Virus record (IMG/VR): IMGVR_UViG_3300018080_008436
Coordinates: 124,001-188,000 of that record
Direction: 5' to 3' (one strand)
DNA length: 64,000 nucleotides
Positions 8,956 to 25,692 of the stretch are shown piece by piece; the stretch's first letter is position 1; each line of letters begins with the position of its first letter. Under the pieces are notes generated by a model that was not told the origin of the DNA, did not search any database, and saw nothing but the letters and a program-made list of their open reading frames with translations. Both the position numbers and the translations under genes were made by a program.

Positions 8956-9786
8956 TCAAGGTAGAATCTCGTCTTCTTGAAGATTTTTTCTGAAAAGCTT
9001 CTTTTGAATCTTTTTCGTCTCTTGCACTCGAATCTGACGAATTCTCTCTGCGCTAACATTATATTTATCTGCCAAGTCCTGTAGACGGACCTTGTCTTCC
9101 TCATATTTGGAAAGAACGATCTCACGAATTCTTGGATCAAGTTCGTAGAGAATCTCTCGTAAGTACGACAACAGGTCTTCCTTCTCCACATCATCATATG
9201 GAGTAGAATTATCATCTGGAATCAAATCCTCCAACATAGAGGAATCATCACCAGAACCTTGTCGCTTTTGCAGAGAAACTGTGTTGACGCTTTTTGCCCT
9301 TTCAAGCTTCTGCATCTTCTCTTCTGAGAACTCAAGTTTCTCTTTGATCTCTTCCCTATCCATCTCTCCATCTGATTCACGAATAGCGGTCTGGATCTTG
9401 ATTAATCCGTCATGAATGCTTTGAGGAATTGCAACAGGGCAACTTTCTTGGATATGACGAATCATTTCAAGCTTAATCCAGTATCCACAGTAAGTGGTGA
9501 ACTTGCAGTTCTTCTCAAGTTCAAATTTCTCGATAGCAGTCATCATACCGATTACACCTGCTCCAATCATGTCATCCATATCTACTTGACACTTCTTGCA
9601 GTAGTAATTGGCCATTTGGGATACGAACCTAATGTGGCTTCTAACAATCTTCTCAATAGCACTATCTTTCTGTGCTTGGGTGTAATCTTCTCCTTTGATG
9701 ATGGAGAAGAGTTCTCTTTCCTCTTTCAGGGAGATATTTGGAATAGAAACTGAGTTTAGGTACTTATCTGCATCCCAATTCTGCAT
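8956..9786 (-). CDS. Sigma-70 family factor (RpoH/RpoD-like, regions 2-4)
   Basis: DDMIGAGVIGMMTAIEKF, KFTTYCGYWI, VSAERIRQI. Confidence 0.9.
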   Translation of the reverse strand: MQNWDADKYLNSVSIPNISLKEERELFSIIKGEDYTQAQKDSAIEKIVRSHIRFVSQMANYYCKKCQVDMDDMIGAGVIGMMTAIEKFELEKNCKFTTYCGYWIKLEMIRHIQESCPVAIPQSIHDGLIKIQTAIRESDGEMDREEIKEKLEFSEEKMQKLERAKSVNTVSLQKRQGSGDDSSMLEDLIPDDNSTPYDDVEKEDLLSYLREILYELDPRIREIVLSKYEEDKVRLQDLADKYNVSAERIRQIRVQETKKIQKKLFRKNLQEDEILP

Positions 9787-10752: not shown

Positions 10753-11610
10753 TTAAGTGAACATTCTCTTCTTGAGGTTATCCTTTTTCCCTTCCAATTG
10801 AGGGGTTTGTGGATATTGTCTTGAAGGAAGTTTCTTTCTCAAAAGCTTGTAGAAGTCATTGTAAGTAAGCTCTGGCTTGCTTCTAATGATCGCAACGGCA
10901 TTCGCAGTCATAGCTCCCTGGAATTTCCCACCAATTCTAGCGTCATAGCTATATTGAGTTGGATTACACCCAGTGATAAGAACTTCTTTCATCTTTTCAG
11001 GTGAGAAGACTTTCTTAGAAACTGACTTAGGAGCGATCTCAAATACTTCTTCATCATCTTCAGGTGGAAGATATCTTGGTTTAGGAGCGTTCTCATCATA
11101 AAGAGTACTCAAAAACGATCTAGTTACTGTTCCTGAATGACATGAGTCAGAAATGAAAGTAAGACTTGCCCCTTCTGGCAATCCGCCTAAGATCTCTCTC
11201 AACTGGTCATCAATCAAAAGTTTGTCATACAAACAAAGAGCTTCGTCTCTTTTGTCAGCTTCGTCTCCACTAACATCTCTGACATTAGTTCCATGTCCTG
11301 AGAAAGTGATGACAACATGACTGTCTGCGGTTGCGTTCTCAACAATCTTTTTCATCTCTCTGACAACATTCTTGTAAGTGGCCTTCTGGTCAAGAAGTTT
11401 GGTCGTTGTGAAGCCATAAAGTTCTTTTAACAATGCTTCCCATGAATTAGCATCGTTAACACAACCTCTAAGATCATTTCTTCTTCCTGGGTAATCATTG
11501 ATTCCAATGTGAAGAGATTGTTTGCAACCTTTCCCCTCACAAACCCTTTCTGTTTTTTTTGTAAAGATTTCAATAAATTTTCTCATGAATTTCCAATCCC
11601 ATAATTTCAT
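10753..11610 (-). CDS. Metacaspase / caspase-like peptidase C14
   Basis: IGINDYPG..LRGCVNDA, FSGHG (catalytic His), ISDSCHSG (catalytic Cys), QTPQL. Confidence 0.9.
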   Translation of the reverse strand: MKLWDWKFMRKFIEIFTKKTERVCEGKGCKQSLHIGINDYPGRRNDLRGCVNDANSWEALLKELYGFTTTKLLDQKATYKNVVREMKKIVENATADSHVVITFSGHGTNVRDVSGDEADKRDEALCLYDKLLIDDQLREILGGLPEGASLTFISDSCHSGTVTRSFLSTLYDENAPKPRYLPPEDDEEVFEIAPKSVSKKVFSPEKMKEVLITGCNPTQYSYDARIGGKFQGAMTANAVAIIRSKPELTYNDFYKLLRKKLPSRQYPQTPQLEGKKDNLKKRMFT

Positions 11611-11672: not shown

Positions 11673-12359
11673 TTAGATCTCGGTTACATCGCCCTTAGCA
11701 ACAACTCTGGCAAGCCGACCGCAATAGCCCCCATGATGCCTCTTGGCATACTCATCTGGAGTTAATCCACATTTTTCTGAAGCAATAATTGCCAAGCAGT
11801 CTGTGATGGCCAACATAACAAGAATACTGGTTGTAGGTGCGATACCCATCTCTCCAATTTCGTTGATCTCCCCCATGTCCAAGCAAACATCTACTTCATC
11901 CCGAATCGGGCTGTCTTCATGTGAAGTAATTCCAATGAACTTTCTTACTCCAAGATTTTTGGCTAACTTGATTGTTTCAAGTACTTCTCTGGTTTTCCCA
12001 GAAGTCGATGCGACAAACAACACATCATTAAATCCAAGGATACCAAGATCCCCATGAGAAGCTTCTCCTGGGTGTAAGTAACAGGAAGAGAACCCTAAGG
12101 AACAAAGAGTTGAGGAAAACTTCCTCATCGCTACTCCTGCCTTTCCCATACCTGTTGTGACTATTTTGTAGTCTTCTTCTGAAGTTGTCGCGAAACTAGA
12201 ATTCGCAATCAAATCTATGGCGTGAATAAAATTCTCATCTAGTTGAATATTAGCTATTGCTTCGGAAAGAGTAACTAGGTATTGATTACCTTTACTAACC
12301 TCACCATTCAACTCCACCCTCACATTCCTCGTCCTCTCCTTCTCCATCATCTCCATCAT
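11673..12359 (-). CDS. SIS-domain arabinose-5-phosphate isomerase-like protein (KdsD/KpsF/GutQ family, no CBS domains)
   Basis: TGMGKAG, HPGEASHGDLG, STSGKT.E, APTTS, HHGG. Confidence 0.8.
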   Translation of the reverse strand: MMEMMEKERTRNVRVELNGEVSKGNQYLVTLSEAIANIQLDENFIHAIDLIANSSFATTSEEDYKIVTTGMGKAGVAMRKFSSTLCSLGFSSCYLHPGEASHGDLGILGFNDVLFVASTSGKTREVLETIKLAKNLGVRKFIGITSHEDSPIRDEVDVCLDMGEINEIGEMGIAPTTSILVMLAITDCLAIIASEKCGLTPDEYAKRHHGGYCGRLARVVAKGDVTEI

Positions 12360-13985: not shown

Positions 13986-14882
13986 TTATACAGATTCATT
14001 GTACCAAATTCCAATGCAATCCCTAATCCTTCTATCCAATCCTACTAAGTCGTAGTCCATCCACATCCTTTGTAAATTTCTCAGAGTTCCATCTTCATTT
14101 CTGAATTTATAGAACACTGCTCGTCTGGATTGAAGATAGGGTATCCCTCCCTTTTTGATCTTATGACCACAGTAAGTCAGCCACAATATGGCCGCATATA
14201 TATTTCCGTTATGAGGTCTGACGCATTTTGTAAAATACTTCTGACAGCATTCAGGCATGAACTTAGTAAACAATGCAGGCCAAAATGGAGAGATAAGTTG
14301 TCTCACTTTCCATTCTATTTTATCCTCGACTGGGATACCTAATTTAACAAGTTCATCAATGACACTATCTTGATACAGCATGTAGGATCTTCCATCCCTT
14401 CTATGGAGCCTACCTGTGCAAAGTAATCCTGCAACATATGACATTGAATCATAATTAGGTTTCAGATACAATGCTGGAACCTTCTGCCAGGATCGAGGAT
14501 GCTTTTGTTTCTTCTGGGGCCGTCCATTCTTAATCTTGCCATAATAGGGGCATTCTTTAAAAACCTTTACCAACAAAGGACTCCCCCACCAAGTAAATGT
14601 CGGGTATTGGGTTTTACTCCAGTTAACAGTCCCACATTTTGTAATGCCTGCGATGAAGTCGCCGTTCCATATCGGATGATCAATTTTCATCATGTGATGA
14701 ATATACCACTTAATATTCTTAGAACTTACTGTTCTGTATAAAGTGTCATGACTTATTGATTCATCCAGGTATTCTTCGACATCACGTTCTGTTAACTTTG
14801 CAGACGCAGGTGGTCCATATTTGATGGCGATCTTAGCCGCCATTCTACACTTCTCTAATTTTCTTTCCTCAGATCTTGTCAC
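13986..14882 (-). CDS. Hypothetical basic protein
   Basis: 298-aa ORF, no confident family. Confidence 0.6.
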   Translation of the reverse strand: MTRSEERKLEKCRMAAKIAIKYGPPASAKLTERDVEEYLDESISHDTLYRTVSSKNIKWYIHHMMKIDHPIWNGDFIAGITKCGTVNWSKTQYPTFTWWGSPLLVKVFKECPYYGKIKNGRPQKKQKHPRSWQKVPALYLKPNYDSMSYVAGLLCTGRLHRRDGRSYMLYQDSVIDELVKLGIPVEDKIEWKVRQLISPFWPALFTKFMPECCQKYFTKCVRPHNGNIYAAILWLTYCGHKIKKGGIPYLQSRRAVFYKFRNEDGTLRNLQRMWMDYDLVGLDRRIRDCIGIWYNESV

Positions 14883-15277
14883 GAGCCTATATTCTCAATA
14901 TCGAATTCTTCCTCATCCTCGTCAAAAAACACAGGCTTTCCCTTGTCCTGTACCTTCTTAACGGTGTCCATAGTCCCCCTACAAAGCTCCCTGTCTTTTG
15001 TGACCATAGCGATCAAGACATCAGAGTTCTCTGCAATGTCCGAGTTACGAATGAAACCCGCTCTCTTTCCGTACATCTCCCACTTAGGGTAATATATGGA
15101 GATGGGAACACCATAAGCCTGAGCAATTATCTCTGCGAAAGCGTCTCCACCTTGTGGGCATCCTCCAGAGACAATGTAGTCTCCTTCCTCGTAAATCTCT
15201 AGGAACCTTTCGACACAACATAGGAAGTCATGTTCTGAATCCCTGCGTCTACTCCCTACAATTCCAATATACTTCAT
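14879..15277 (-). CDS. SLOG/DprA-like (DUF2493/YspA-type) nucleotide-binding protein
   Basis: IGIVGSR, IVSGGC..GGD, RN..I..SDVLIA, GT..T. Confidence 0.75.
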   Translation of the reverse strand: MKYIGIVGSRRRDSEHDFLCCVERFLEIYEEGDYIVSGGCPQGGDAFAEIIAQAYGVPISIYYPKWEMYGKRAGFIRNSDIAENSDVLIAMVTKDRELCRGTMDTVKKVQDKGKPVFFDEDEEEFDIENIGS

Positions 15278-15289
15278 TGTCGTACCACG

Positions 15290-15322
15290 AAAAAAACCTT
15301 GGCAAGATTTCTCCCGCCAAGG
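15290..15322 (-). terminator. Strong intrinsic terminator after the AACGQL peptide gene
   Basis: CCTTGGCGGGA-GAAA-TCTTGCCAAGG (11-bp stem with 2 G-U pairs, GNRA loop) followed by T7. Confidence 0.9.
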
Positions 15323-15335
15323 CTGTTAATTTTAC

Positions 15336-15476
15336 TTAGTCTTCAGTAATGATCGAAAGCTGACCACATGCGGCCTTGGCATTGATTTCTGCCTCAGTCG
15401 CAACAGCAACAGCATGATCATAGTTTTCCTGTTCGAGTTCTTCTTTGATGGTTGTCGTCAGATCTTGAGTTTCCAT
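15336..15476 (-). CDS. 46-aa peptide matching the detached C-terminal methyl-Cys segment of an RlmN/Cfr-like enzyme (unannotated)
   Basis: Hand translation METQDLTTTIKEELEQENYDHAVAVATEAEINAKAACGQLSIITED. AAGGAG RBS 6 nt before ATG; terminator directly after. AACGQL matches the RlmN DIDAACGQL motif. Confidence 0.88.
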   Translation of the reverse strand: METQDLTTTIKEELEQENYDHAVAVATEAEINAKAACGQLSIITED

Positions 15477-15541
15477 GATCTTCTCCTTAATTAGAGTTTG
15501 GACTTAGGTTCGTGTCGGAATGACAATAACCTCATATTCTC

Positions 15542-15548
15542 ATTATAC
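15542..15548 (-). promoter_or_regulatory. Class II GTATAAT motif overlapping the radical SAM stop codon (candidate internal promoter for the peptide gene)
   Basis: The same heptamer occurs at about 15 gene boundaries in the window. Confidence 0.55.
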
Positions 15549-16337
15549 CAGATTAATCCCTTCTATTATGCCCTTTCCTAAATTATTTTCGTCAGAAATT
15601 TCATTTTCATTGATTGGTGAGATCTTGATGAAGAAATGCTCTGGGTCAAAATGTTTGCGTAACTCCTTGATATTCCAGTCATCTTCGTCAACCATTGTCA
15701 GGTTAACAGTGGTCTTCAGATTACTCTTTGTCCTAACTGCCCCCAACTGTTGAATGGTCATCTTTTTCTTGTAGGGGATCAAATCATCCCGTCTTTTCTC
15801 CTGCAAGCTATGCAAAGACAACTGAAGGGTAATGTTGTCTCTGATCCAGGAAAAGTCACTTCCTTTAATCCCAATGGTCGAGATATAATGGTGAGTATTC
15901 GGGTATATGGCATTGATCTCTTCAATGGCCTTTCTGACCTCTTCTTCATTCAGAAAAGTATCGCCCATCCTTGTGTAGTTGATCTTGAACTCTTTGCAGG
16001 TTGATGGATTAATTTCTGGATGAGTTGTGAGGACAAACATGACCTGTTGCACAATTTCTTCAGCAGTTAAGTTTCTGAATCTTTTGAGCTTTCCTGTTGC
16101 GCAGAATTTGCAACGAATTGGACATCCACTGGATACGGAGACTCCGATCATCCATCGTTCTGTCCTATCTCCAACTTCACAGTCTTTGAGCTTGTTTTGC
16201 TTTCTTCCGATTGCGTCTTTGGTATAGAATGGGAGGAAAGTATCTGTCAACTCAATGGGGTAGCCATCTTCAGTTTCTAGGGCGTAAACAACTCCATTGG
16301 TGAATTCTCTTTTTCTGATTTCTTTTAACATTACCAT
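15543..16337 (-). CDS. RlmN/Cfr-like radical SAM enzyme, truncated at both ends (likely start 16331)
   Basis: IELT, SVSSGCPIRCKFCATG (CxxxCxxC), RNLTAEEIVQQV, RMGD, ISTIG, LQLSLHS..RRDDLIP. Lacks the C-terminal AACGQL and has G where RlmN has the resolving Cys (LCVSSQVGC vs IGVSVSSGC). Confidence 0.9.
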   Translation of the reverse strand: MVMLKEIRKREFTNGVVYALETEDGYPIELTDTFLPFYTKDAIGRKQNKLKDCEVGDRTERWMIGVSVSSGCPIRCKFCATGKLKRFRNLTAEEIVQQVMFVLTTHPEINPSTCKEFKINYTRMGDTFLNEEEVRKAIEEINAIYPNTHHYISTIGIKGSDFSWIRDNITLQLSLHSLQEKRRDDLIPYKKKMTIQQLGAVRTKSNLKTTVNLTMVDEDDWNIKELRKHFDPEHFFIKISPINENEISDENNLGKGIIEGINLV

Positions 16338-16828
16338 ATCTCCGTTATTCCAAATGGTTCTTGATCTTCTGGTTCTTCTGGTTCTTGTTTAAAATCTAAT
16401 GTTTTCTTTTTCTCTGATTCTGGTGGCTCACTTTTACTAACATCTACCCAGTGAGGAACTCCAACATTAAAAACAGTTTCTGAATAGTGGATTCTAGCAT
16501 CACATCCACCATGCATAAACATATGGTTGTTTAGTATGCATTTAAAAGTCTTTTGATCCATAAAATTGAATCCTTTAGGACTCACTTTTATGAAAGTTAC
16601 AGGAAACCATGCTTTGAATTTTCCATTCCACTCGGTCCTGATCCAATAGGTCCGACCAAGCTTCAGTTTCATATATTTGTTTCTTTTTCTGTATGTGGTT
16701 TGAAATCTGTAACTAGACATTGATTCACTCCATAGAAGATTATGGTCCAAGAACCTTTCCAATCTTTTTCCAGGTCTCATAACCACGAACAGGTTTATCA
16801 CAAATAGGACAAACTCCTGAAGCTTCAA
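16331..16828 (-). CDS. Hypothetical protein (true start probably internal)
   Basis: ORF track. Confidence 0.5.
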   Translation of the reverse strand: MKLQEFVLFVINLFVVMRPGKRLERFLDHNLLWSESMSSYRFQTTYRKRNKYMKLKLGRTYWIRTEWNGKFKAWFPVTFIKVSPKGFNFMDQKTFKCILNNHMFMHGGCDARIHYSETVFNVGVPHWVDVSKSEPPESEKKKTLDFKQEPEEPEDQEPFGITEIW

Positions 16829-16970
16829 CTATCTGAAACCATTTACTCCCTTGACTGATGGACAATCCGTGTTTCCTATCTGCCAAATGACACTTTCCTC
16901 CTTTGAATTCCCCATGCTCACAACCTTCCATAATATTACTCAACTCCATAAGCTTTCTTGACTCTTTCAA
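16740..16970 (-). CDS. Small Cys-rich hypothetical protein
   Basis: CEH..CH..CPIC. Confidence 0.5.
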   Translation of the reverse strand: MKESRKLMELSNIMEGCEHGEFKGGKCHLADRKHGLSISQGSKWFQIVEASGVCPICDKPVRGYETWKKIGKVLGP

Positions 16971-18120
16971 CCATGTCTGGATCGCCCATAGTCTTACCTA
17001 AATCATCTGACAGCTTGACCAGAGGCTTGCCGTTACAACTCATGAGCTTCATAACGACATTCAGAGGCTTTCTACCTACGTCATTCGACAAGTTAGTACC
17101 AATCCCGAACGCAACCCCAACTCGACCTGCAAAATGCTTCCAGATGTTGATTGCTTTACTTACATTCAAGCTGTCAGAGAAGATGATCGATTTCCTTTTG
17201 GGGTCAATACCAACACTCTCATAATGAGCAATCATATCGTTACCAAATTTAATAGGATCTCCACTATCCTGCCTGACTCCATCATAAGCCCTGGCAACTG
17301 GGAATGTGAAGTCATTGAAGAAAGCCTTCGTTGTGAAAGTATCAGTCAAAGCGATACCAAGAGCCTGTCCATACTCCTGTTGCCATACATACAATGCCCT
17401 GCTTTGAGCCTGATCTATACGATCAACCAAACCAAGATGACTCATCGTCCATTCATGTGCAACAGTCCCGATTGGCTTAATTCCATACTTCATGGCAAGA
17501 TAGACGTTTGAAGTCCCAATCATATTTCTTGGGCATTTGTCCACCAAAGTGCAAACTTCCTCTTCCTGCCAATCTCTGGAATATCTTCTTCTGGTGCCGA
17601 ACTCAGCGAAAATGAGATTTGGGTAGTCACGGATTTGACTTATCTTATTTTCCAGTCTTTCCCTTCCATCACGAAGGATCATATCCAAATCAAGTTCGAA
17701 GATATCTCGTTCAAATTCGAAATACAACTCGTTCACAATAGAAAGGATGTAAACTTCCAGAATGTTGACAAAAACCAAGCTCCCTTTCGCTCGGATGATG
17801 ATATCACCATTTCCATCATCGTCAACAGTAACCCCAGCAATACCTGGAACAAATCTGCTTTGAAACCACTCAAGAAAGTCTTCCTTAAAATATCCGAGAC
17901 TTTTGAGATATTCTCTCTCTTCATCACTCAAACGAAGATTTTTCAGATTGTCAATCTGTAGCTTAACATTCTTTTTTAAATGCCCAAGTTTTACCTCTTT
18001 ATCACGATTACGAAACTCCCAATGCCCATACGCAGTCGGGTACTGATGATAGTAAGCCTGGAGCATCGAAAGTTTGTAAAGGTCAGTATCCAAAACACTT
18101 GTGATAATTGGATCGTTCAT
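16936..18120 (-). CDS. pncB: Nicotinate phosphoribosyltransferase
   Basis: LDTDLYKLSM, EFGTRRR, GTSNV, GTVAHEW, DTFTT, GVRQDSGDP, FSDSLN, FGIGT, KLSD. Confidence 0.92.
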   Translation of the reverse strand: MNDPIITSVLDTDLYKLSMLQAYYHQYPTAYGHWEFRNRDKEVKLGHLKKNVKLQIDNLKNLRLSDEEREYLKSLGYFKEDFLEWFQSRFVPGIAGVTVDDDGNGDIIIRAKGSLVFVNILEVYILSIVNELYFEFERDIFELDLDMILRDGRERLENKISQIRDYPNLIFAEFGTRRRYSRDWQEEEVCTLVDKCPRNMIGTSNVYLAMKYGIKPIGTVAHEWTMSHLGLVDRIDQAQSRALYVWQQEYGQALGIALTDTFTTKAFFNDFTFPVARAYDGVRQDSGDPIKFGNDMIAHYESVGIDPKRKSIIFSDSLNVSKAINIWKHFAGRVGVAFGIGTNLSNDVGRKPLNVVMKLMSCNGKPLVKLSDDLGKTMGDPDMVERVKKAYGVE

Positions 18121-20171: not shown

Positions 20172-22262
20172 TTATTCCTCCAACATGGCATGAAAGTCAT
20201 CTTCAGAGATAATCTCACATCCAAGCTTGTTTGCTTTATCATACTTACCGCCTGTCATACTACCATCCCATACGAGGATCGTTCCTTTGCCAACGGAACC
20301 GCATTTACCGCCATTATCAACAACCATCTTCTCAAGCTCTTTGCGCTTGACAGAGAACGTTCCAGTAAAACAGAACTTCTTCCCAACCAGGATCTCACTC
20401 TCTGCTTCTTCAACTTCTGCTGTAATATAACGAAGAAGCAACTTGATCTCACCTCGAATGGCTTTCCATCCATTGACAAAGTTCTCGGCTTTGACTTCAC
20501 CAAAACCTGGGAGAGCCTCAAGCTCTGCAACAGTGAGAGCGTCGATCTCTTCAATACTTGGAGCAATGTAAACAATATCCTTCGCCATCGATCCGATCTT
20601 GGCGATCCCAAGAGCTTCAATAAAGGTATGCAGAGGAACTTCTTTTACAGACTTGACGGACTCTACAATGTTAGCGTATGCCTTCTCACCAAAGAACTCC
20701 TTCAGATAGTTGTACTTTCTGAACGGATGATCTGAACGTCTGTCGTTGTCCAACATAAAATACATCTGAGGAAGAGACTCAATGATGGCATGACCTTCCC
20801 ATTTCAAAAGATCTTTGTTCGTCAACTTGGAAATAGTTCCAATTCCAAGTCCCTTTACACCGATTTTCTTAAACCAGTTATCGATCTTGGCATTCAACTG
20901 CGCAAGACAGTTGTAATTGTCACAGATCAAATCAACCTTCTCGCCTTCGGAGTTAGTTGTCCATTTCAAAGGCTCTCCACAAGATGGACATTCTGTTGGG
21001 ATGTCGATCATCTGCTTGCTATAATGATCATTGATGACCTTTACGATCTGAGGGATAATATCACCTTTCTTGGCAATGATTACCTTAGTCCCAATATGGA
21101 TCTGATGAGGTTCGCCCTTCAATATTGATCCATAATTATGTAAAGATACTCGCTGAATCATTGCTCCCCCAAGCTCAACAGGCTTTACAATGCCCACAGG
21201 AGCGATTTTACCCGTTCTGCCGACGTTTGGCTCGACTTTCAGGATCGGAGTAGGGGCAGACTCTTCTGGAGGAAATTTAATAGCTCTAGCCGATTTTGGC
21301 TTTCTACCTTTGGAGACAGATCCCATGTTTTTCCCAAACTTAATATCATCAACTTTGAAAACCACTCCATCAATGTCATATGGGAGCCTTTTACGATCAA
21401 TGCTTTTCATGTAAACATCAGCCGCTTTGACAACACTTTTTGCATCAATACCGACCTTAGTCCATTTGGTGGAAGTTCTGAGAGTATTGAAGCCGTTCTT
21501 CTCTAGAAACTCCATCTTTGACTTCTCAGTATCAAAGTCTTTCTGAACTATCTCATAGGCGACAAAAGAGACTCCACGTTCTTTCGTTACCTTGGCATCC
21601 TTCTGATTGATTGCACCAGCCGCAAAGTTTCTTGGATTTGCATATGCTCCACCTGCGGAGGTATGCCAACGCTTATAGAAGTCTTGACGATCTTTGTAGC
21701 ATTCGCCTCTTACCTCAACAAGACCCTGGTAGGAAATGGTCTTCCTTACACCCTCAACATATACGGCATTTGATGTGACATCAACACCCTCTTCCCCATC
21801 GCCCCTGGTGACGGCCTTGACAAGCTTACCATTGTCATAGGTCAACCCCAGAGACAGTCCATCAATCTTGTGCTGAAGCTGAAAAGAAAGGCTTTGACAG
21901 TTCGGATAAGTTTTCCCGAACCAGTCATCAAACTGTTGGATATCCAGAGACTTGCTCAAAGATCCCATAATAACAGCATGTTTTACTTTGGTCCCATAGA
22001 CATGTTCTCCACCAACTTCGTTGAGGAATTCATTGTCAGGATCATTCTCTTCAAGCCATTCGCAGACAGTGTAATACTCTCTGTCATATTCGGCATCCGA
22101 AATGGGGGATTGACCTACTTCATAGGTCTTGCAACAGTGACGCAGAAATGCGATCCTGTCTTCAATGGGGAGGGTACTGTCTACTGCGGTCATTTTTGTA
22201 ACGTCAGGCATATTGATTTCTCCAATGTTATTTTTGATATTAGGTCTAAAGTAACTCAACAA
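20172..22262 (-). CDS. ligA: NAD+-dependent DNA ligase (likely start 22211)
   Basis: ISDAEYD, HKIDG, TRGDG, VRGEC, NPRNFAAG, DGVVFK, Zn finger, BRCT. A promoter at 22248-22275 and an RBS support the downstream ATG. Confidence 0.95.
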   Translation of the reverse strand: MLSYFRPNIKNNIGEINMPDVTKMTAVDSTLPIEDRIAFLRHCCKTYEVGQSPISDAEYDREYYTVCEWLEENDPDNEFLNEVGGEHVYGTKVKHAVIMGSLSKSLDIQQFDDWFGKTYPNCQSLSFQLQHKIDGLSLGLTYDNGKLVKAVTRGDGEEGVDVTSNAVYVEGVRKTISYQGLVEVRGECYKDRQDFYKRWHTSAGGAYANPRNFAAGAINQKDAKVTKERGVSFVAYEIVQKDFDTEKSKMEFLEKNGFNTLRTSTKWTKVGIDAKSVVKAADVYMKSIDRKRLPYDIDGVVFKVDDIKFGKNMGSVSKGRKPKSARAIKFPPEESAPTPILKVEPNVGRTGKIAPVGIVKPVELGGAMIQRVSLHNYGSILKGEPHQIHIGTKVIIAKKGDIIPQIVKVINDHYSKQMIDIPTECPSCGEPLKWTTNSEGEKVDLICDNYNCLAQLNAKIDNWFKKIGVKGLGIGTISKLTNKDLLKWEGHAIIESLPQMYFMLDNDRRSDHPFRKYNYLKEFFGEKAYANIVESVKSVKEVPLHTFIEALGIAKIGSMAKDIVYIAPSIEEIDALTVAELEALPGFGEVKAENFVNGWKAIRGEIKLLLRYITAEVEEAESEILVGKKFCFTGTFSVKRKELEKMVVDNGGKCGSVGKGTILVWDGSMTGGKYDKANKLGCEIISEDDFHAMLEE

Positions 22263-23493: not shown

Positions 23494-24002
23494 TTTTCTT
23501 TCCTTTCAAGGTAACAATCCTCACAGAGTACCTTGATCCATAATAAGTCTGTTCTTCTTTTCGCAGGACTTCCACAAAGTTCGCATATATGAAAAGATTG
23601 ATTTGTTGCTATTTGTGTCAACTCATAAATCTCTTCGTAGAGTTCCTGCCCGATTTGTTTTGGTTGAATGTCTTGCATATAAAAACAAAAAACCCCGAGT
23701 TTCTCTTTAATTTGAGCTACTCGGGGGTGAGCGTCAGAATCTGGATTCTGCACTGTCCAGGCCCTGACTTTTGGTTCAAGGGCTGAGCAGAGATCGTGAA
23801 GAATCTCATGCCAGCCTTCACCAATACATACATTCAACGGAGATACGGAGGGTATAGAGGGGTCTTGAGGATCTGAAAAAATGGTCGGATACCTCTCAAA
23901 TAACTCATCTCTAAATTTAATTAAATCTTCCATAATGTTGTCTCCTGTTGCCATTATAAGGACTTTGTTAACAAAATCAAGTCCTTTTGACAACATCGAC
24001 AA
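23490..24002 (-). CDS. Hypothetical phage protein
   Basis: GEGW..QIKEKLG..CELCG..LCEDC motif set. Confidence 0.65.
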   Translation of the reverse strand: MSMLSKGLDFVNKVLIMATGDNIMEDLIKFRDELFERYPTIFSDPQDPSIPSVSPLNVCIGEGWHEILHDLCSALEPKVRAWTVQNPDSDAHPRVAQIKEKLGVFCFYMQDIQPKQIGQELYEEIYELTQIATNQSFHICELCGSPAKRRTDLLWIKVLCEDCYLERKEK

Positions 24003-25692
24003 TCGTTAAATCAAACTGTTCAAAGCGTTTTGAGTTATCCCAGTGTTGAGGAAAAGTAAAGTAGATATCTACTGGTTCATCTTCAATCTGCTTGTCATAC
24101 TTTGGTGAGAACCATTTAAACTTATGATCAAGAAGCTCTTCCCCTTTATAAACTTTGAACGTCAGAACTCTCCAGCCAGCCCCCTCTCGAAACGTAGTAG
24201 ATGTGATTCTTACGTCCTTTAACTGGAAAATCGGCTCAGAGTTATGTTCCTTACAGTATGGAGAAAGCTTATCTACTAAAACCTTGGCTGTCTCTTCATT
24301 CACTGCCCCAAATTTGAGGGAAGCATTGAACATCTTACTAAGCATACCATCTGCCTTATGCTTTTTGACATATTCAGCACAAGCATTGTCGAAAATTCCT
24401 TGGGCCTTTTGGAGATACTCTTCTTTAATAGTTACACCTACAGCCGCCGCATGACCACCATACTTATCAAACATAAAATTGCAACTATCAAGAATCTCTT
24501 TAAGATTTATGCCTGGAACTGAACGCCCACTCCCTTTCCATACTCCATTATGTTTCCCAATAACTAGTGCTGGAAGACCTGTTTCATCAACAACTCTTGA
24601 GGCAACAATCCCAACAACTCCAATGTGGAAATTCTCGTCAAAAACAACAACCCCATTCTTTGCCTCAATCTTCTTGACCTTCTCCATGGCACCTTGCTCA
24701 ACGAATCCCTGAAGCTCTTTTCTCTGGTCATTAATTTCGTTGACTTTCTTTGCCATCTTATCTGCAAGCACATGGTCATGTTCTATCAAAGTTCTGAAAG
24801 CCAAATCTGGAGTCTCAATTCGTCCAGTAGCGTTAATCATTGGAGCGATACGGAATTCAATGTCCCCCTGAGTAATAACGTCAGCAAATTTAACCTTAGC
24901 TTTTATAAGTGAATTTAATCCCGTTGCGCTAACATGATCCAGTGCATATCTGGTCAATCCATTCTTCACTATAATTCGATTGTCACCTATGACTGGCTGA
25001 GCGTCAGCAAGTGTACCAATGGCCGCATAGGACAGGAACTCAATTGGATCAACATGCTTGGTCAACCACCTAATGCCCCTTATGAAGTGAAACGCCTGCC
25101 CACAAGCGCACATTTCATTGAAATCATTAGTGAAATGCCAACTAATCAGGGCATCGGCGTTTTCAGAGACTTCTTTGCCAGGGAGATGGTGGTCAATTAT
25201 GATGACATCCTTGACTCCGAACTCCTTCAGTTGTTTTATCTCTTTGGGGTTGCTAGTTCCACAGTCAGTTACGAACAAAAGGTCTGGAGCCGTTTTGGTC
25301 CTGTCTTTGAATGCTTGAACTGTTTTGTCATTGAGGCCATATCCGTGCTTCAATCTATTGGGGAGGAATGGAACGCACTGCATCTTGAAGTTTCTACAAA
25401 GTTCATACAACATTGTTGTACTAACAACTCCATCACAGTCATAATCTCCAATGATCCCCACTCTGCTTTTGTTCTTGGCATGTTGAATAAACAAACGGGC
25501 CGCTTTTTCAACATCATTCAATTCAAATGGTTCATTGAGCTTCTGATAGTCTGTCGTCAAAAATTCGCTGATTTCAGACGGTTTTAAGGGACTTTGAGAC
25601 AAAATACGAGCTAGGAGTCGATGACTACCATCTTTTCGCAATTCGACCTCTTTGATCTTATCATGTTCTTTTTTAGTCCACATCGTCTTCAA
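23977..25692 (-). CDS. recJ: ssDNA exonuclease RecJ (DHH family)
   Basis: GDYDCDG, HGYG, TDCG, IIDHH, GTLAD, APMINATGR, KGSGRS, GGHAAAVG. Confidence 0.93.
   Translation of the reverse strand: MKTMWTKKEHDKIKEVELRKDGSHRLLARILSQSPLKPSEISEFLTTDYQKLNEPFELNDVEKAARLFIQHAKNKSRVGIIGDYDCDGVVSTTMLYELCRNFKMQCVPFLPNRLKHGYGLNDKTVQAFKDRTKTAPDLLFVTDCGTSNPKEIKQLKEFGVKDVIIIDHHLPGKEVSENADALISWHFTNDFNEMCACGQAFHFIRGIRWLTKHVDPIEFLSYAAIGTLADAQPVIGDNRIIVKNGLTRYALDHVSATGLNSLIKAKVKFADVITQGDIEFRIAPMINATGRIETPDLAFRTLIEHDHVLADKMAKKVNEINDQRKELQGFVEQGAMEKVKKIEAKNGVVVFDENFHIGVVGIVASRVVDETGLPALVIGKHNGVWKGSGRSVPGINLKEILDSCNFMFDKYGGHAAAVGVTIKEEYLQKAQGIFDNACAEYVKKHKADGMLSKMFNASLKFGAVNEETAKVLVDKLSPYCKEHNSEPIFQLKDVRITSTTFREGAGWRVLTFKVYKGEELLDHKFKWFSPKYDKQIEDEPVDIYFTFPQHWDNSKRFEQFDLTIVDVVKRT

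What the first reader, a model, noticed from the sequence alone, without database searches (positions are those of the whole stretch)
15290..16337. Naturally split RlmN/Cfr-like radical SAM enzyme: the methyl-Cys is on a separate 46-aa peptide and the resolving Cys is lost
Seen: the radical SAM ORF (15543-16337) aligns by eye to the RlmN core but stops just after the IKISPIN strand. After a 66-nt gap, an unannotated ORF (15476-15336) encodes the missing last helix, strand and AACGQL loop. It has an AAGGAG RBS, a GTATAAT promoter motif over the enzyme's stop codon and an 11-bp GNRA terminator, so it looks like a deliberately expressed gene rather than decay. The enzyme also lacks the RlmN N-terminal domain, reads IGVSVSSGC where RlmN has LCVSSQVGC, and has MGDT for MGEP. 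Established: in E. coli RlmN, Cys355 (AACGQL) is methylated by SAM, turned into a methylene radical and added to adenine, and Cys118 resolves the covalent adduct; C118 mutants stay cross-linked to RNA. Inference: with no resolving Cys and a detachable, separately expressed Cys-carrier, the enzyme could turn over by consuming peptides and leaving them covalently attached to a target such as rRNA, tRNA, DNA or a nucleotide. Alternatives are a RiPP-like modified peptide or a GrcA-style spare-part subunit.
Basis: partly seen in the sequence, partly recalled or inferred. Interest (0 to 1): 0.92.

Follow-up and report, generated by a model that had tools for sequence, protein, structure and literature searches.

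The report
Two-piece phage RlmN-like radical SAM enzyme
Many phages encode an RlmN/Cfr-type radical SAM enzyme in two pieces, with the catalytic cysteine loop on a separate 40-residue peptide and the second catalytic cysteine missing, and the pair often sits inside the phage's NAD-salvage genes, which points to an undescribed chemistry on a nucleotide rather than on ribosomal RNA.

Summary
The 264-aa enzyme (15543-16337, minus strand) has an RlmN/Cfr core. It lacks the N-terminal domain, has Gly where RlmN has Cys118, and stops before the last helix, strand and Cys loop. The 46-aa ORF (15336-15476) supplies that missing piece, including AACGQL.

- **Conservation:** 134 split loci were found, including four lineages of cultured phages. 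Of these, 127 carry the peptide gene: 64 adjacent, 61 with genes in between, 2 upstream. One peptide ORF holds two tandem modules.
- **Selection:** peptide dN/dS is about 0.11.
- **Artefact ruled out:** this is not decay or an assembly error.

- **Cys118 loss is older than the split.** A sister clade of fused enzymes also lacks Cys118 but keeps the CGQ cysteine. Loss of Cys118 therefore does not by itself show that the peptide is consumed.
- **The context points to NAD salvage, not rRNA, tRNA or DNA.** NAMPT, NAPRT, NMNAT-Nudix or PncA-NadE genes flank or enclose the module in 14 of 39 split clusters. The window has an NAPRTase 0.6 kb upstream. Relatives are fused to isochorismatase or NUDIX domains.

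Substrate and peptide fate are unknown. I found no description in the searchable literature.

The parts
15543..16337 (-). Core subunit: N-terminally truncated RlmN/Cfr-type radical SAM enzyme, 264 aa. Cluster cysteines are C72, C76 and C79. Gly65 sits at the RlmN Cys118 position. The protein ends after the IKISPIN strand with a disordered tail.
   Evidence: PF04055 E 2.4e-7. TIGR00048 RlmN E 8.5e-20, model positions 103-249 only, 71 bits against a cut-off of 290. AF2 pLDDT 88.7, residues 250-264 poorly ordered. The top nine Foldseek PDB hits are all RlmN/Cfr, TMq 0.58-0.69. Alignments.
15336..15476 (-). Cys-loop peptide, 46 aa, net charge -9. It supplies the missing last helix, last strand and AACGQL loop. 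The invariant Cys37 codon TGT is at 15368-15366.
   Evidence: Colinear with the RlmN C-terminus. Invariant A24 A26 T27 E30 A36 C37 G38 Q39 in 23 diverse peptides. Present in 127 of 134 split loci. dN/dS 0.11. Belongs near a 761-member peptide cluster in the ESM Atlas.
15477..15542 (-). 66-nt spacer between the two ORFs, with AAGGAG (15488-15483) 6 nt before the peptide ATG. An extended -10-like TGGTATAAT (15550-15542) overlaps the enzyme stop.
   Evidence: Read directly from the sequence. The promoter-like site is a motif match only. In relatives the median gap is 20 nt, with no room for a promoter.
15288..15324 (-). Intrinsic terminator closing the enzyme-peptide unit: stem of 13 pairs, GAAA loop, T7 tail.
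   Evidence: -20.3 kcal/mol, z = -3.5.
16936..18120 (-). Context: nicotinate phosphoribosyltransferase (PncB-like), 0.6 kb upstream on the same strand.
   Evidence: PF04095 E 4.9e-71 and PF17767 E 7.6e-28. The same kind of gene lies upstream of the module in L096, L119 and L122.
16331..16828 (-). Context: 165-aa ORF of unknown function whose end overlaps the enzyme start by 7 nt. It is not conserved in other loci.
   Evidence: No Pfam or PHROG match. No tblastn match in any other fetched locus.
14879..15277 (-). Context: 132-aa SLOG/YspA-like protein, starting just after the terminator.
   Evidence: PF10686 E 4.5e-4, below cut-off. phrog_289 E 3.2e-15. [quoted passage not shown] This is a lead only.

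Best explanation
This is a conserved two-gene phage module encoding a class-A (RlmN/Cfr-type) radical SAM enzyme in two polypeptides.

- Core: the 264-aa protein holds the [4Fe-4S]/SAM site.
- Peptide: the roughly 40-aa acidic peptide docks by supplying the missing last helix and strand, and places its single invariant cysteine (Cys37) where RlmN has Cys355.
- Chemistry, inferred by homology: that cysteine is S-methylated by one SAM. A 5'-deoxyadenosyl radical from a second SAM then turns the methyl into a methylene radical, which adds to an sp2 carbon of the substrate.
- Substrate, inferred from context: most likely not rRNA or tRNA but a small adenine or pyridine nucleotide, or a base, of the NAD salvage pathway.
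- Resolution: the whole clade lacks Cys118, so the adduct cannot be resolved as in RlmN.

I lean, only slightly, to the peptide being a detachable subunit that is released by another route: an external thiol or reductant, a peptide-borne second Cys in some lineages, or radical-anion C-S cleavage.

What is shown: the anatomy, the conservation, the fold, the Cys pattern and the gene context. What is inferred: docking, cysteine methylation, substrate class and peptide fate.
For: - Split architecture and colinearity with RlmN.
- Conserved across Bacteroides, Moorella, Pectobacterium/Yersinia and Vibrio phages, and in 134 loci.
- Purifying selection on the peptide.
- Fold.
- Only the three cluster cysteines are conserved in the enzyme, and one in the peptide.
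- Tight adjacency, median gap 20 nt with some overlaps, typical of subunits.
- Fused Cys118-less relatives keep the CGQ cysteine as their only other invariant Cys.
- NAD context: NAMPT or NAPRT next to the module in 19 loci; NMNAT-Nudix and PncA-NadE neighbours; the module lies between NMNAT-Nudix and NAMPT in six loci; 14 of 39 dereplicated split clusters are positive.
- Published genome-wide rates, for comparison: NARP1+2 in 5.4% of sequenced phages and NadV in 22-33% of medium and jumbo phages.
- Fusions of relatives to isochorismatase, NUDIX and PNP_UDP_1.
- No N-terminal RNA-binding domain, a near-neutral core and an acidic peptide.
Against: - No experiment or co-fold was possible, so docking and Cys methylation are inferred from homology alone.
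- The peptide profile does not reach RlmN statistically on its own.
- The NAD link is guilt by association. It holds for about a third of split clusters, is absent around the four cultured lineages examined, and phage metabolic genes tend to cluster anyway.
- The window has an NAPRTase but no NMNAT was found.
- About half of the loci carry extra radical SAM genes between enzyme and peptide. This fits a peptide-maturation cluster as well.
- The tandem two-module peptide in Vibrio phage D479 fits a consumable better than a subunit.
Confidence: 0.5

Rival explanations
1. Sacrificial peptide. With no resolving cysteine, each peptide is used once and stays linked through S-CH2 to its target, giving a peptide-nucleotide or peptide-nucleic acid conjugate. 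Splitting off the Cys loop lets the core turn over while spending only a 40-aa peptide.
For: - Cys118 is absent in every split enzyme, and there is no other conserved Cys.
- RlmN C118A makes no m2A and was used to trap the covalent enzyme-tRNA complex (PMC5130265).
- The order of events, Cys118 loss first and then the split, is what an economy argument predicts.
- One phage has two tandem Cys modules in one ORF.
- No re-fused version was seen among 134 split loci, although gaps are often 0-20 nt.
Against: - Fused Cys118-less enzymes are common. They would all have to be suicide enzymes.
- The peptide is usually co-transcribed and closely coupled, not obviously over-expressed.
- If the substrate is a metabolite of NAD salvage, one peptide per molecule is too costly for bulk synthesis.
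- About a fifth of the peptides carry a second Cys at +4 or +7 that could resolve the adduct.
Confidence: 0.2
2. RiPP-like system. The peptide is the substrate and the end product. Its helix-strand part acts as a leader that docks on the core. The cysteine is modified (S-methyl, or a methylene bridge to another residue), and further enzymes decorate it.
For: - In 51 loci a second radical SAM enzyme and a small class I methyltransferase lie between enzyme and peptide.
- In 8 loci a different radical SAM enzyme, with weak YydG/HxsC-type hits, and a small protein with a Cys/Gly/Ser-rich tail lie there.
- One split-type enzyme is fused to a second radical SAM domain.
- The Vibrio phage D479 ORF resembles a multi-core precursor.
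Against: - The peptide is conserved along its whole length, not only in a leader, and keeps the exact RlmN loop AACGQ over very distant phages.
- No protease or exporter stood out among the neighbouring genes that were examined, but no systematic search for one was made.
- The window and half of the loci have no accessory enzyme.
- Fused relatives carry the same loop as part of the enzyme.
Confidence: 0.18
3. The cysteine no longer carries a methyl group. In the Cys118-less clade it serves as a hydrogen-atom donor or thiyl radical site for a non-methylating radical reaction on a nucleotide or base, as in spore photoproduct lyase or peptide epimerases. The split is a neutral gene fission.
For: - The whole clade lost Cys118 yet keeps one Cys.
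- A sister group in CPR/DPANN-like cellular contexts lacks the Cys loop altogether. This suggests the core can work without the RlmN ping-pong.
- The use of single Cys H-donors in other radical SAM enzymes is from my own knowledge.
Against: The AACGQ loop is kept letter for letter as in RlmN. That is easier to explain if the SN2 methylation geometry is retained. There is no direct evidence either way.
Confidence: 0.1
4. Pseudogene or assembly artefact: a broken RlmN gene with a chance downstream ORF.
For: The two ORFs share a frame.
Against: - Three in-frame stops lie between the ORFs.
- The sequence is identical in other runs.
- The same break point occurs in 134 loci from unrelated phages. 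Gene order is varied, and genes are inserted between the two parts.
- dN/dS is 0.11.
Confidence: 0.01

Closest known systems
RlmN / Cfr (class A radical SAM methylases; 23S rRNA A2503 and tRNA A37 C2/C8 methylation)
   Same: Same core fold and CX3CX2C site. The best sequence and structure matches are RlmN and Cfr. The Cys355 loop AACGQL is kept exactly.
   Different: - The Cys loop is on a separate peptide.
- Cys118 is replaced by Gly.
- There is no N-terminal domain.
- The bit score is far below the family cut-offs (71 against 290).
- It is phage-encoded and linked to NAD-salvage genes rather than to ndk/rodZ-type housekeeping contexts.
Phage N-truncated RlmN-like enzymes in one piece (e.g. 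Vibrio phage 166E36-1, Salmonella phage Arash, Stenotrophomonas phage BUCTxx99; Bacteroides phage Versailles type)
   Same: They also lack the N-terminal domain and are also phage-borne. The 166E36-1 gene also lies next to NAMPT, and a Versailles-type locus (L230) lies between NMNAT-Nudix and NAMPT.
   Different: They are single polypeptides. The first group keeps both cysteines (GGGCGQLW). The Versailles type lacks Cys118 but keeps a fused C-terminal Cys. None has a described function.
Phage NAD reconstitution pathway NARP2 (Nampt + Nmnat; KVP40 NadV/NatV)
   Same: The module is embedded in or adjacent to Nampt and NMNAT-Nudix genes in many loci.
   Different: NARP2 as published has two enzymes and no radical SAM partner. 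The window has an NAPRTase instead of Nampt. Any role of the module in NAD chemistry is inferred only.
Sacrificial cysteine donors (LarE in the NAD-derived nickel-pincer cofactor pathway; THI4) and the GrcA spare-part protein
   Different: They belong to unrelated families. LarE and THI4 give up sulfur, not a methylene. GrcA repairs an existing full-length enzyme, which does not exist here.
Radical SAM RiPP maturases with precursor peptides
   Same: A small peptide gene lies beside one or more radical SAM enzymes, and docking would be by strand addition.
   Different: Here the peptide is the homolog of the enzyme's own C-terminus and is conserved end to end. No leader/core division was seen. 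No protease or exporter stood out among the neighbours examined, and none was searched for systematically.

Membership tests
RlmN/Cfr class A radical SAM methylase | CX3CX2C cluster motif in a radical SAM core | tested here: met
   C72, C76 and C79 are invariant. PF04055 is above its cut-off.
RlmN/Cfr class A radical SAM methylase | Sequence and fold of the RlmN/Cfr core | tested here: met
   The best NCBIfam hits are RlmN and Cfr (E 8.5e-20), but at 71 bits against a cut-off of 290 and over model positions 103-249 only. The top nine Foldseek PDB hits are all RlmN/Cfr, TMq 0.58-0.69. This is a relative of the family, not an equivalog.
RlmN/Cfr class A radical SAM methylase | Methyl-carrying Cys (E. 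coli Cys355) on the enzyme's own C-terminal loop | tested here: not met
   The enzyme ends before it. The loop AACGQL is on the separate 46-aa peptide. It is present in trans only.
RlmN/Cfr class A radical SAM methylase | Resolving Cys (E. coli Cys118), 7 residues before the first cluster Cys | tested here: not met
   Gly65 in the window. All 80 IMG/VR loci and the 38 closest genome-contig loci read Gly. An automated recount gave Gly in 128 of 134 split loci.
RlmN/Cfr class A radical SAM methylase | N-terminal accessory domain (RlmN_N) | tested here: not met
   The alignment with Klebsiella RlmN starts near residue 90 of RlmN. There is no PF21016 hit.
RlmN/Cfr class A radical SAM methylase | m2A or m8A formation on A2503 or A37 | not testable with these tools
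   This needs biochemistry. The window has no tRNA genes.
Split (two-polypeptide) enzyme | Two ORFs colinear with one protein in relatives, both conserved and linked | tested here: met
   Fused relatives.
RiPP precursor plus radical SAM maturase | Leader/core organisation, hypervariable core, tailoring, protease or export genes | tested here: inconclusive
   Accessory radical SAM and methyltransferase genes occur in about half of the loci. The peptide is conserved end to end. No protease or exporter stood out among the neighbours examined, and none was searched for systematically.
Phage NAD salvage / NARP2-type operon | Co-location with Nampt or NAPRT and an NMN/NaMN adenylyltransferase | tested here: inconclusive
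   14 of 39 split clusters are positive. In the window only an NAPRTase is found nearby, with no NMNAT. This is association, not membership.
Known anti-phage defence systems (PADLOC) | Match to a defence-system protein model | tested here: not met
   There is no hit for the enzyme, the peptide or the fused relatives.

The most novel reading that the evidence does not exclude
The pair is a peptide-spending alkylation system aimed at an NAD-related nucleotide. The methylene radical on the peptide's cysteine adds to the adenine or the pyridinium ring of NAD+, ADP-ribose or an ADPR-derived immune signal. The peptide stays attached, giving a peptide-nucleotide conjugate that blocks or traps NAD-consuming defence enzymes or their signals. 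The fused Cys118-less relatives would then be true suicide enzymes, and the split an economy measure.
Probability: 0.12. Interest if true: 0.95.

Novelty: new variant of a known kind. Interest (0 to 1): 0.8.

Why it matters
RlmN and Cfr are the textbook case of methylation through a protein-bound methyl-cysteine and a second resolving cysteine.

Here a large viral clade has dropped the resolving cysteine. In part of that clade the methyl-carrying loop has moved onto a free peptide. The clade comprises hundreds of metagenomic phage contigs, (pro)phage-like stretches in Bacteroidales isolate genomes, and cultured Pectobacterium, Yersinia, Vibrio, Moorella and Bacteroides phages.

That poses a clear chemical question: how is the thioether adduct resolved, or is it not resolved? 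It also offers a natural two-component system in which the catalytic cysteine can be swapped, labelled or titrated.

The repeated placement inside phage NAD-salvage operons suggests an unrecognised step or by-pass in the NAD arms race between phages and NAD-depleting defences. Neither the NARP papers nor the survey of viral NAD/ADPr systems mention it.

Several cultured phages carry the module, so the question is directly testable.

Tried and rejected
- **Read-through or recoding:** rejected. Three in-frame stops of two kinds lie between the ORFs.
- **Assembly error:** rejected.
- **Peptide profile against the PDB:** no RlmN hit at E up to 10. NCBIfam gives only weak Cfr hits.
- **Co-folding enzyme and peptide:** I removed those rows.
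- **RNA evidence:** no RNA run was found holding the stretch, in a search with kind 'any', which is not a dedicated RNA search. Expression ratios could not be measured.
- **Charge analysis:** not decisive.
- **PADLOC:** no hit.
- **The 'RKIGVSL' sister group:** not in IMG/VR. In metagenomes it lies beside housekeeping genes (rpsL, nrdR, ftsZ, valS-like, read by eye), with no CGQ peptide nearby. It is not a second split of the same kind.
- **Conserved third partner:** the upstream 165-aa ORF, the SLOG-like gene and the Kehishuvirus SPFH gene are not shared between loci.
- **Literature:** nine full-text searches found no description.
- **Link to p-crAssphage:** the large L022-type clade has no megablast match in the phage collection, so I do not call it crAssphage.
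Full report
**1. What is in the window**

On the minus strand, a 264-aa ORF (15543-16337) is followed after 66 nt by a 46-aa ORF (15336-15476) and a strong intrinsic terminator.
- The two ORFs share a reading frame but are separated by TAA, TGA and a further TAA.
- The large ORF is a radical SAM protein (PF04055). Its best family matches are RlmN and Cfr, at E 8.5e-20 and only over the core of the model. The score of 71 bits is far below the curated cut-off of 290.
- An AlphaFold2 model is confident (pLDDT 88.7, pTM 0.87) except for the last 15 residues or so.
- Its nine significant PDB matches are all RlmN or Cfr, with TM by query 0.58-0.69. The next hit, a viperin-like enzyme, is at E 0.03.

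**2. The split**

I aligned the enzyme with a bona fide RlmN (Klebsiella, between ndk and rodZ) and with one-piece phage relatives.
- The enzyme lacks the N-terminal domain.
- It reads WMIGVSVSSGC where RlmN reads TLCVSSQVGC, so Gly65 stands at the Cys118 position.
- It stops right after the IKISPIN strand.
- The peptide continues the alignment without a break: helix (IKEELEQENY against FSKVLMEYGF), strand (AVAVAT against TTIVRKT) and loop (INAKAACGQL against DDIDAACGQL).

On its own the peptide profile is too short to reach RlmN in the PDB. Only 2 of 23 peptides touch Cfr models, at E 0.02. The ESM Atlas places RlmN fragments as the nearest named cluster, which is a lead only.

**3. It is conserved, not decay**

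Cultured phages of four unrelated lineages have the same truncated enzyme plus a small ORF with ...A-x-A-T-x-x-E-...-AACGQ:
- Kehishuvirus tikkala (Bacteroides)
- Moorella phage MTATph1
- Pectobacterium phages Wc4, Arno162 and Arno18, and Yersinia phage P778
- Vibrio phage D479

Across IMG/VR and GTDB contigs I collected 134 split-type loci. Of these, 127 carry the peptide ORF within the fetched flank:
- 64 are directly downstream (median gap 20 nt, range -17 to 77).
- 61 are downstream with genes in between (median 1171 nt).
- 2 are upstream (L122, L206).

Further points:
- The first 80 IMG/VR loci and the 38 closest genome-contig loci all have Gly at the Cys118 position. An automated recount gave Gly in 128 of 134.
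- The peptide core has a median dN/dS of 0.11, against 0.074 for a stretch of the enzyme.
- Eight peptide positions are invariant over 23 diverse sequences, among them the single cysteine.
- The top 120 of 2030 database homologs are all 202-285 aa, so none is long enough to be a fused form.
- The window's sequence recurs unchanged in contigs of two other runs, which may be one data set filed twice.
- In Vibrio phage D479 the peptide ORF holds two nearly identical modules in tandem.
- One homolog carries an intein.

**4. Where the split sits in the family**

The evidence comes from a search of 1.8 billion representatives and a quick maximum-likelihood tree of 92 sequences rooted on RlmN. The tree shows nested groups:
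- Cellular RlmN has both cysteines and the N-terminal domain.
- N-truncated phage enzymes keep both cysteines (GGGCGQLW; e.g. Vibrio phage 166E36-1, Salmonella phage Arash).
- A clade of 51 sequences lacks Cys118 (SH-aLRT 98).

That last clade holds three kinds of enzyme:
- 17 one-piece enzymes that keep a C-terminal ..SNCGQ.. cysteine (support 100). It is their only invariant Cys besides the cluster.
- One deep one-piece member (P0230, AACGQ).
- A group that keeps the last helix and strand but has no Cys loop at all, and the split group.

The Cys-loop-less group lies next to housekeeping genes in CPR/DPANN-like contigs, with no CGQ peptide nearby.

So Cys118 was lost before the gene was split, and one-piece enzymes without Cys118 are common. 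The tree is a quick one with many unresolved forks. The order of events rests on two well-supported branches.

**5. Context**

I saw no partner gene common to all loci other than the peptide. Two recurrent kinds of neighbour stand out.

*First, extra radical SAM genes between enzyme and peptide.*
- 51 loci have a MoaA/viperin-like radical SAM protein plus a 148-aa class I methyltransferase there.
- 8 loci have a different radical SAM protein plus a small protein with a Cys/Gly/Ser-rich tail.
- One split-type enzyme is fused to a second radical SAM domain.
- The window has none of these.

*Second, and more telling, NAD salvage genes.*
- The window has an NAPRTase 0.6 kb upstream. L096, L119 and L122 have one too.
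- NAMPT-like genes lie next to the module in 15 further loci.
- Pfam shows the other neighbours to be NMNAT-Nudix (NadM/NatV-like) proteins and, in L119, a PncA-NadE fusion.
- The module lies between NMNAT-Nudix and NAMPT in L010, L196, L199-L201 and L230.
- It lies directly after NAMPT in L007, L021, L036, L106 and L202-L204.
- It lies among PncA, NAPRT and NMNAT genes in L119, L123, L124 and L126. All of these are on the same strand.

After dereplication at 75% identity, 14 of 39 split clusters are positive, as are 1 of 17 fused Cys118-less clusters and 1 of 3 two-Cys clusters.

For comparison:
- NARP1+2 occur somewhere in 5.4% of sequenced phages (bioRxiv 10.1101/2024.02.11.579819).
- NadV occurs in 22-33% of medium and jumbo phages (PMC9503650).
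- Being within 4-5 kb of a given gene by chance should be about 1-2%. This is my rough estimate, not a formal test.

Relatives are fused to isochorismatase (nicotinamidase-type), NUDIX, a thioredoxin-reductase-like domain and PNP_UDP_1/QueT.

The window region also holds an NAD-dependent ligase and a SLOG-like gene just after the terminator. [quoted passage not shown]

There are no tRNA genes in the window. The core is near neutral and the peptide strongly acidic.

**6. How it most likely works**

Shown: a two-polypeptide RlmN-type enzyme with one cysteine in trans and no Cys118.

Inferred from RlmN (mechanism as summarised in PMC5130265 and from my own knowledge):
- The peptide docks as the last helix and strand.
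- Its Cys is methylated by SAM.
- The methyl is activated to a methylene radical and adds to an sp2 carbon.

RlmN C118A makes no m2A and was used to trap the covalent enzyme-tRNA complex. Three outcomes are therefore possible:
- The peptide stays attached.
- It is released by another thiol or by a different cleavage.
- The Cys has another radical role.

I weigh these as follows:
- The common one-piece Cys118-less relatives, the tight coupling of the two genes and the metabolite-type context lean towards a recycled subunit.
- The order of events, the absence of any re-fusion, and the tandem peptide lean towards a consumable.
- A second Cys at +4 or +7 in about a fifth of the peptides, though not in the window, could resolve the adduct within the peptide.
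- The accessory radical SAM genes keep a RiPP-like reading alive.

The substrate is unknown. Context favours an adenine or pyridine nucleotide, or a base, of NAD salvage over rRNA or tRNA. From my own knowledge, a pyridinium ring is a good acceptor for such a radical, as in the isoniazid-NAD adduct. That is speculation.

**7. Novelty**

Nine full-text searches found no report of a split RlmN/Cfr enzyme, of a phage RlmN-like enzyme with a trans cysteine, or of a radical SAM partner of phage NAD salvage. Reading the NARP paper and the survey of viral NAD/ADPr systems found none either. The library lacks most subscription journals, so absence is not proof.

I file it as a new variant of a known kind: a class A radical SAM enzyme with a new architecture, probably a new substrate class, and an open mechanistic question.

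**8. Verdict**

The split is real, selected and lacks Cys118. However, Cys118 loss is older than the split, consumption of the peptide is unproven, and the likely field of action is NAD or nucleotide metabolism rather than rRNA, tRNA or DNA.

Noticed in passing
window 16936-18120; loci L007, L010, L021, L036, L081, L086, L096, L106, L119, L122-L127, L196, L199-L204, L230: NAD-salvage genes (NAPRT, NAMPT, NMNAT-Nudix, PncA-NadE) lie beside or around the RlmN-like module in many unrelated phage contigs. The papers on phage NAD reconstitution that I read do not mention a radical SAM partner.
   Followed up: yes
L022:5780-6968 (51 loci alike); L011:5792-7009 (8 loci alike): Between enzyme and peptide, many loci carry either a MoaA/viperin-like radical SAM protein plus a 148-aa methyltransferase, or a small protein with a Cys/Gly/Ser-rich C-terminal tail (e.g. 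...DPCGRSSSSSISRC) plus another radical SAM protein. Their role is unknown.
   Followed up: partly
L004:2803-3084 (Vibrio phage D479): The peptide ORF holds two nearly identical helix-strand-AACGQM modules in tandem. It was the only such case among 79 unique peptides.
   Followed up: partly
L196-L204 and L022-type loci: About a fifth of the peptides have a second cysteine at +4 (CGQMC) or +7 (CGQLAIIC) after the invariant one, in two separate lineages. It could act as a peptide-borne resolving thiol. The window's peptide has none.
   Followed up: partly
P0179 group; loci L174-L188: A sister group of about 275-aa enzymes (KIGVSL.SGC, MGDP) keeps the last helix and strand but has no Cys loop. 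It lies beside housekeeping genes (rpsL, nrdR, ftsZ and valS-like, read by eye) in what look like CPR/DPANN genomes, with no CGQ peptide nearby.
   Followed up: partly
P0122 (601 aa); L121 has a 588-aa ORF: A split-type enzyme is interrupted by an intein with a LAGLIDADG domain just after the cluster motif.
   Followed up: no
P0183, P0208, P0256, P0258; Atlas clusters: One-piece relatives are fused to NUDIX, isochorismatase (nicotinamidase-type), a thioredoxin-reductase-like flavoprotein, or PNP_UDP_1 plus QueT. All of these are base, nucleoside or nucleotide or redox helpers.
   Followed up: partly
L005 (Stenotrophomonas phage BUCTxx99), H22 (Xanthomonas phage JGB6): The one-piece two-Cys RlmN-like gene is annotated as 'prohibitin family protein' in these records, which looks like a mis-annotation. 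In BUCTxx99 it lies beside a cluster of phage tRNA genes.
   Followed up: no
window 14879-15277: A 132-aa SLOG/YspA-like protein starts right after the module's terminator. [quoted passage not shown]
   Followed up: partly
window 8956-9786, 10753-11610, 11673-12359, 20172-22262, 23977-25692: The surrounding genome encodes a sigma-70-like factor, a caspase-like Peptidase_C14 protein, a SIS-domain protein, an NAD-dependent DNA ligase and a RecJ-like DHH protein. The source contig is 476 kb, from a sediment sample, so this is probably a very large phage.
   Followed up: no
window 15340-15420 (loose ends): Short contigs from the same sediment and seawater runs carry other variants of the peptide gene (e.g. 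...EAGAACGQL), so several phages with this module co-occur there.
   Followed up: no
L099, L105, L112, L114: Some split modules lie on large contigs of isolate genomes of Bacteroidales (Segatella copri, Bacteroides congonensis, Lepagella muris, Muribaculaceae). This suggests prophages or co-cultured phages and gives possible laboratory hosts.
   Followed up: no
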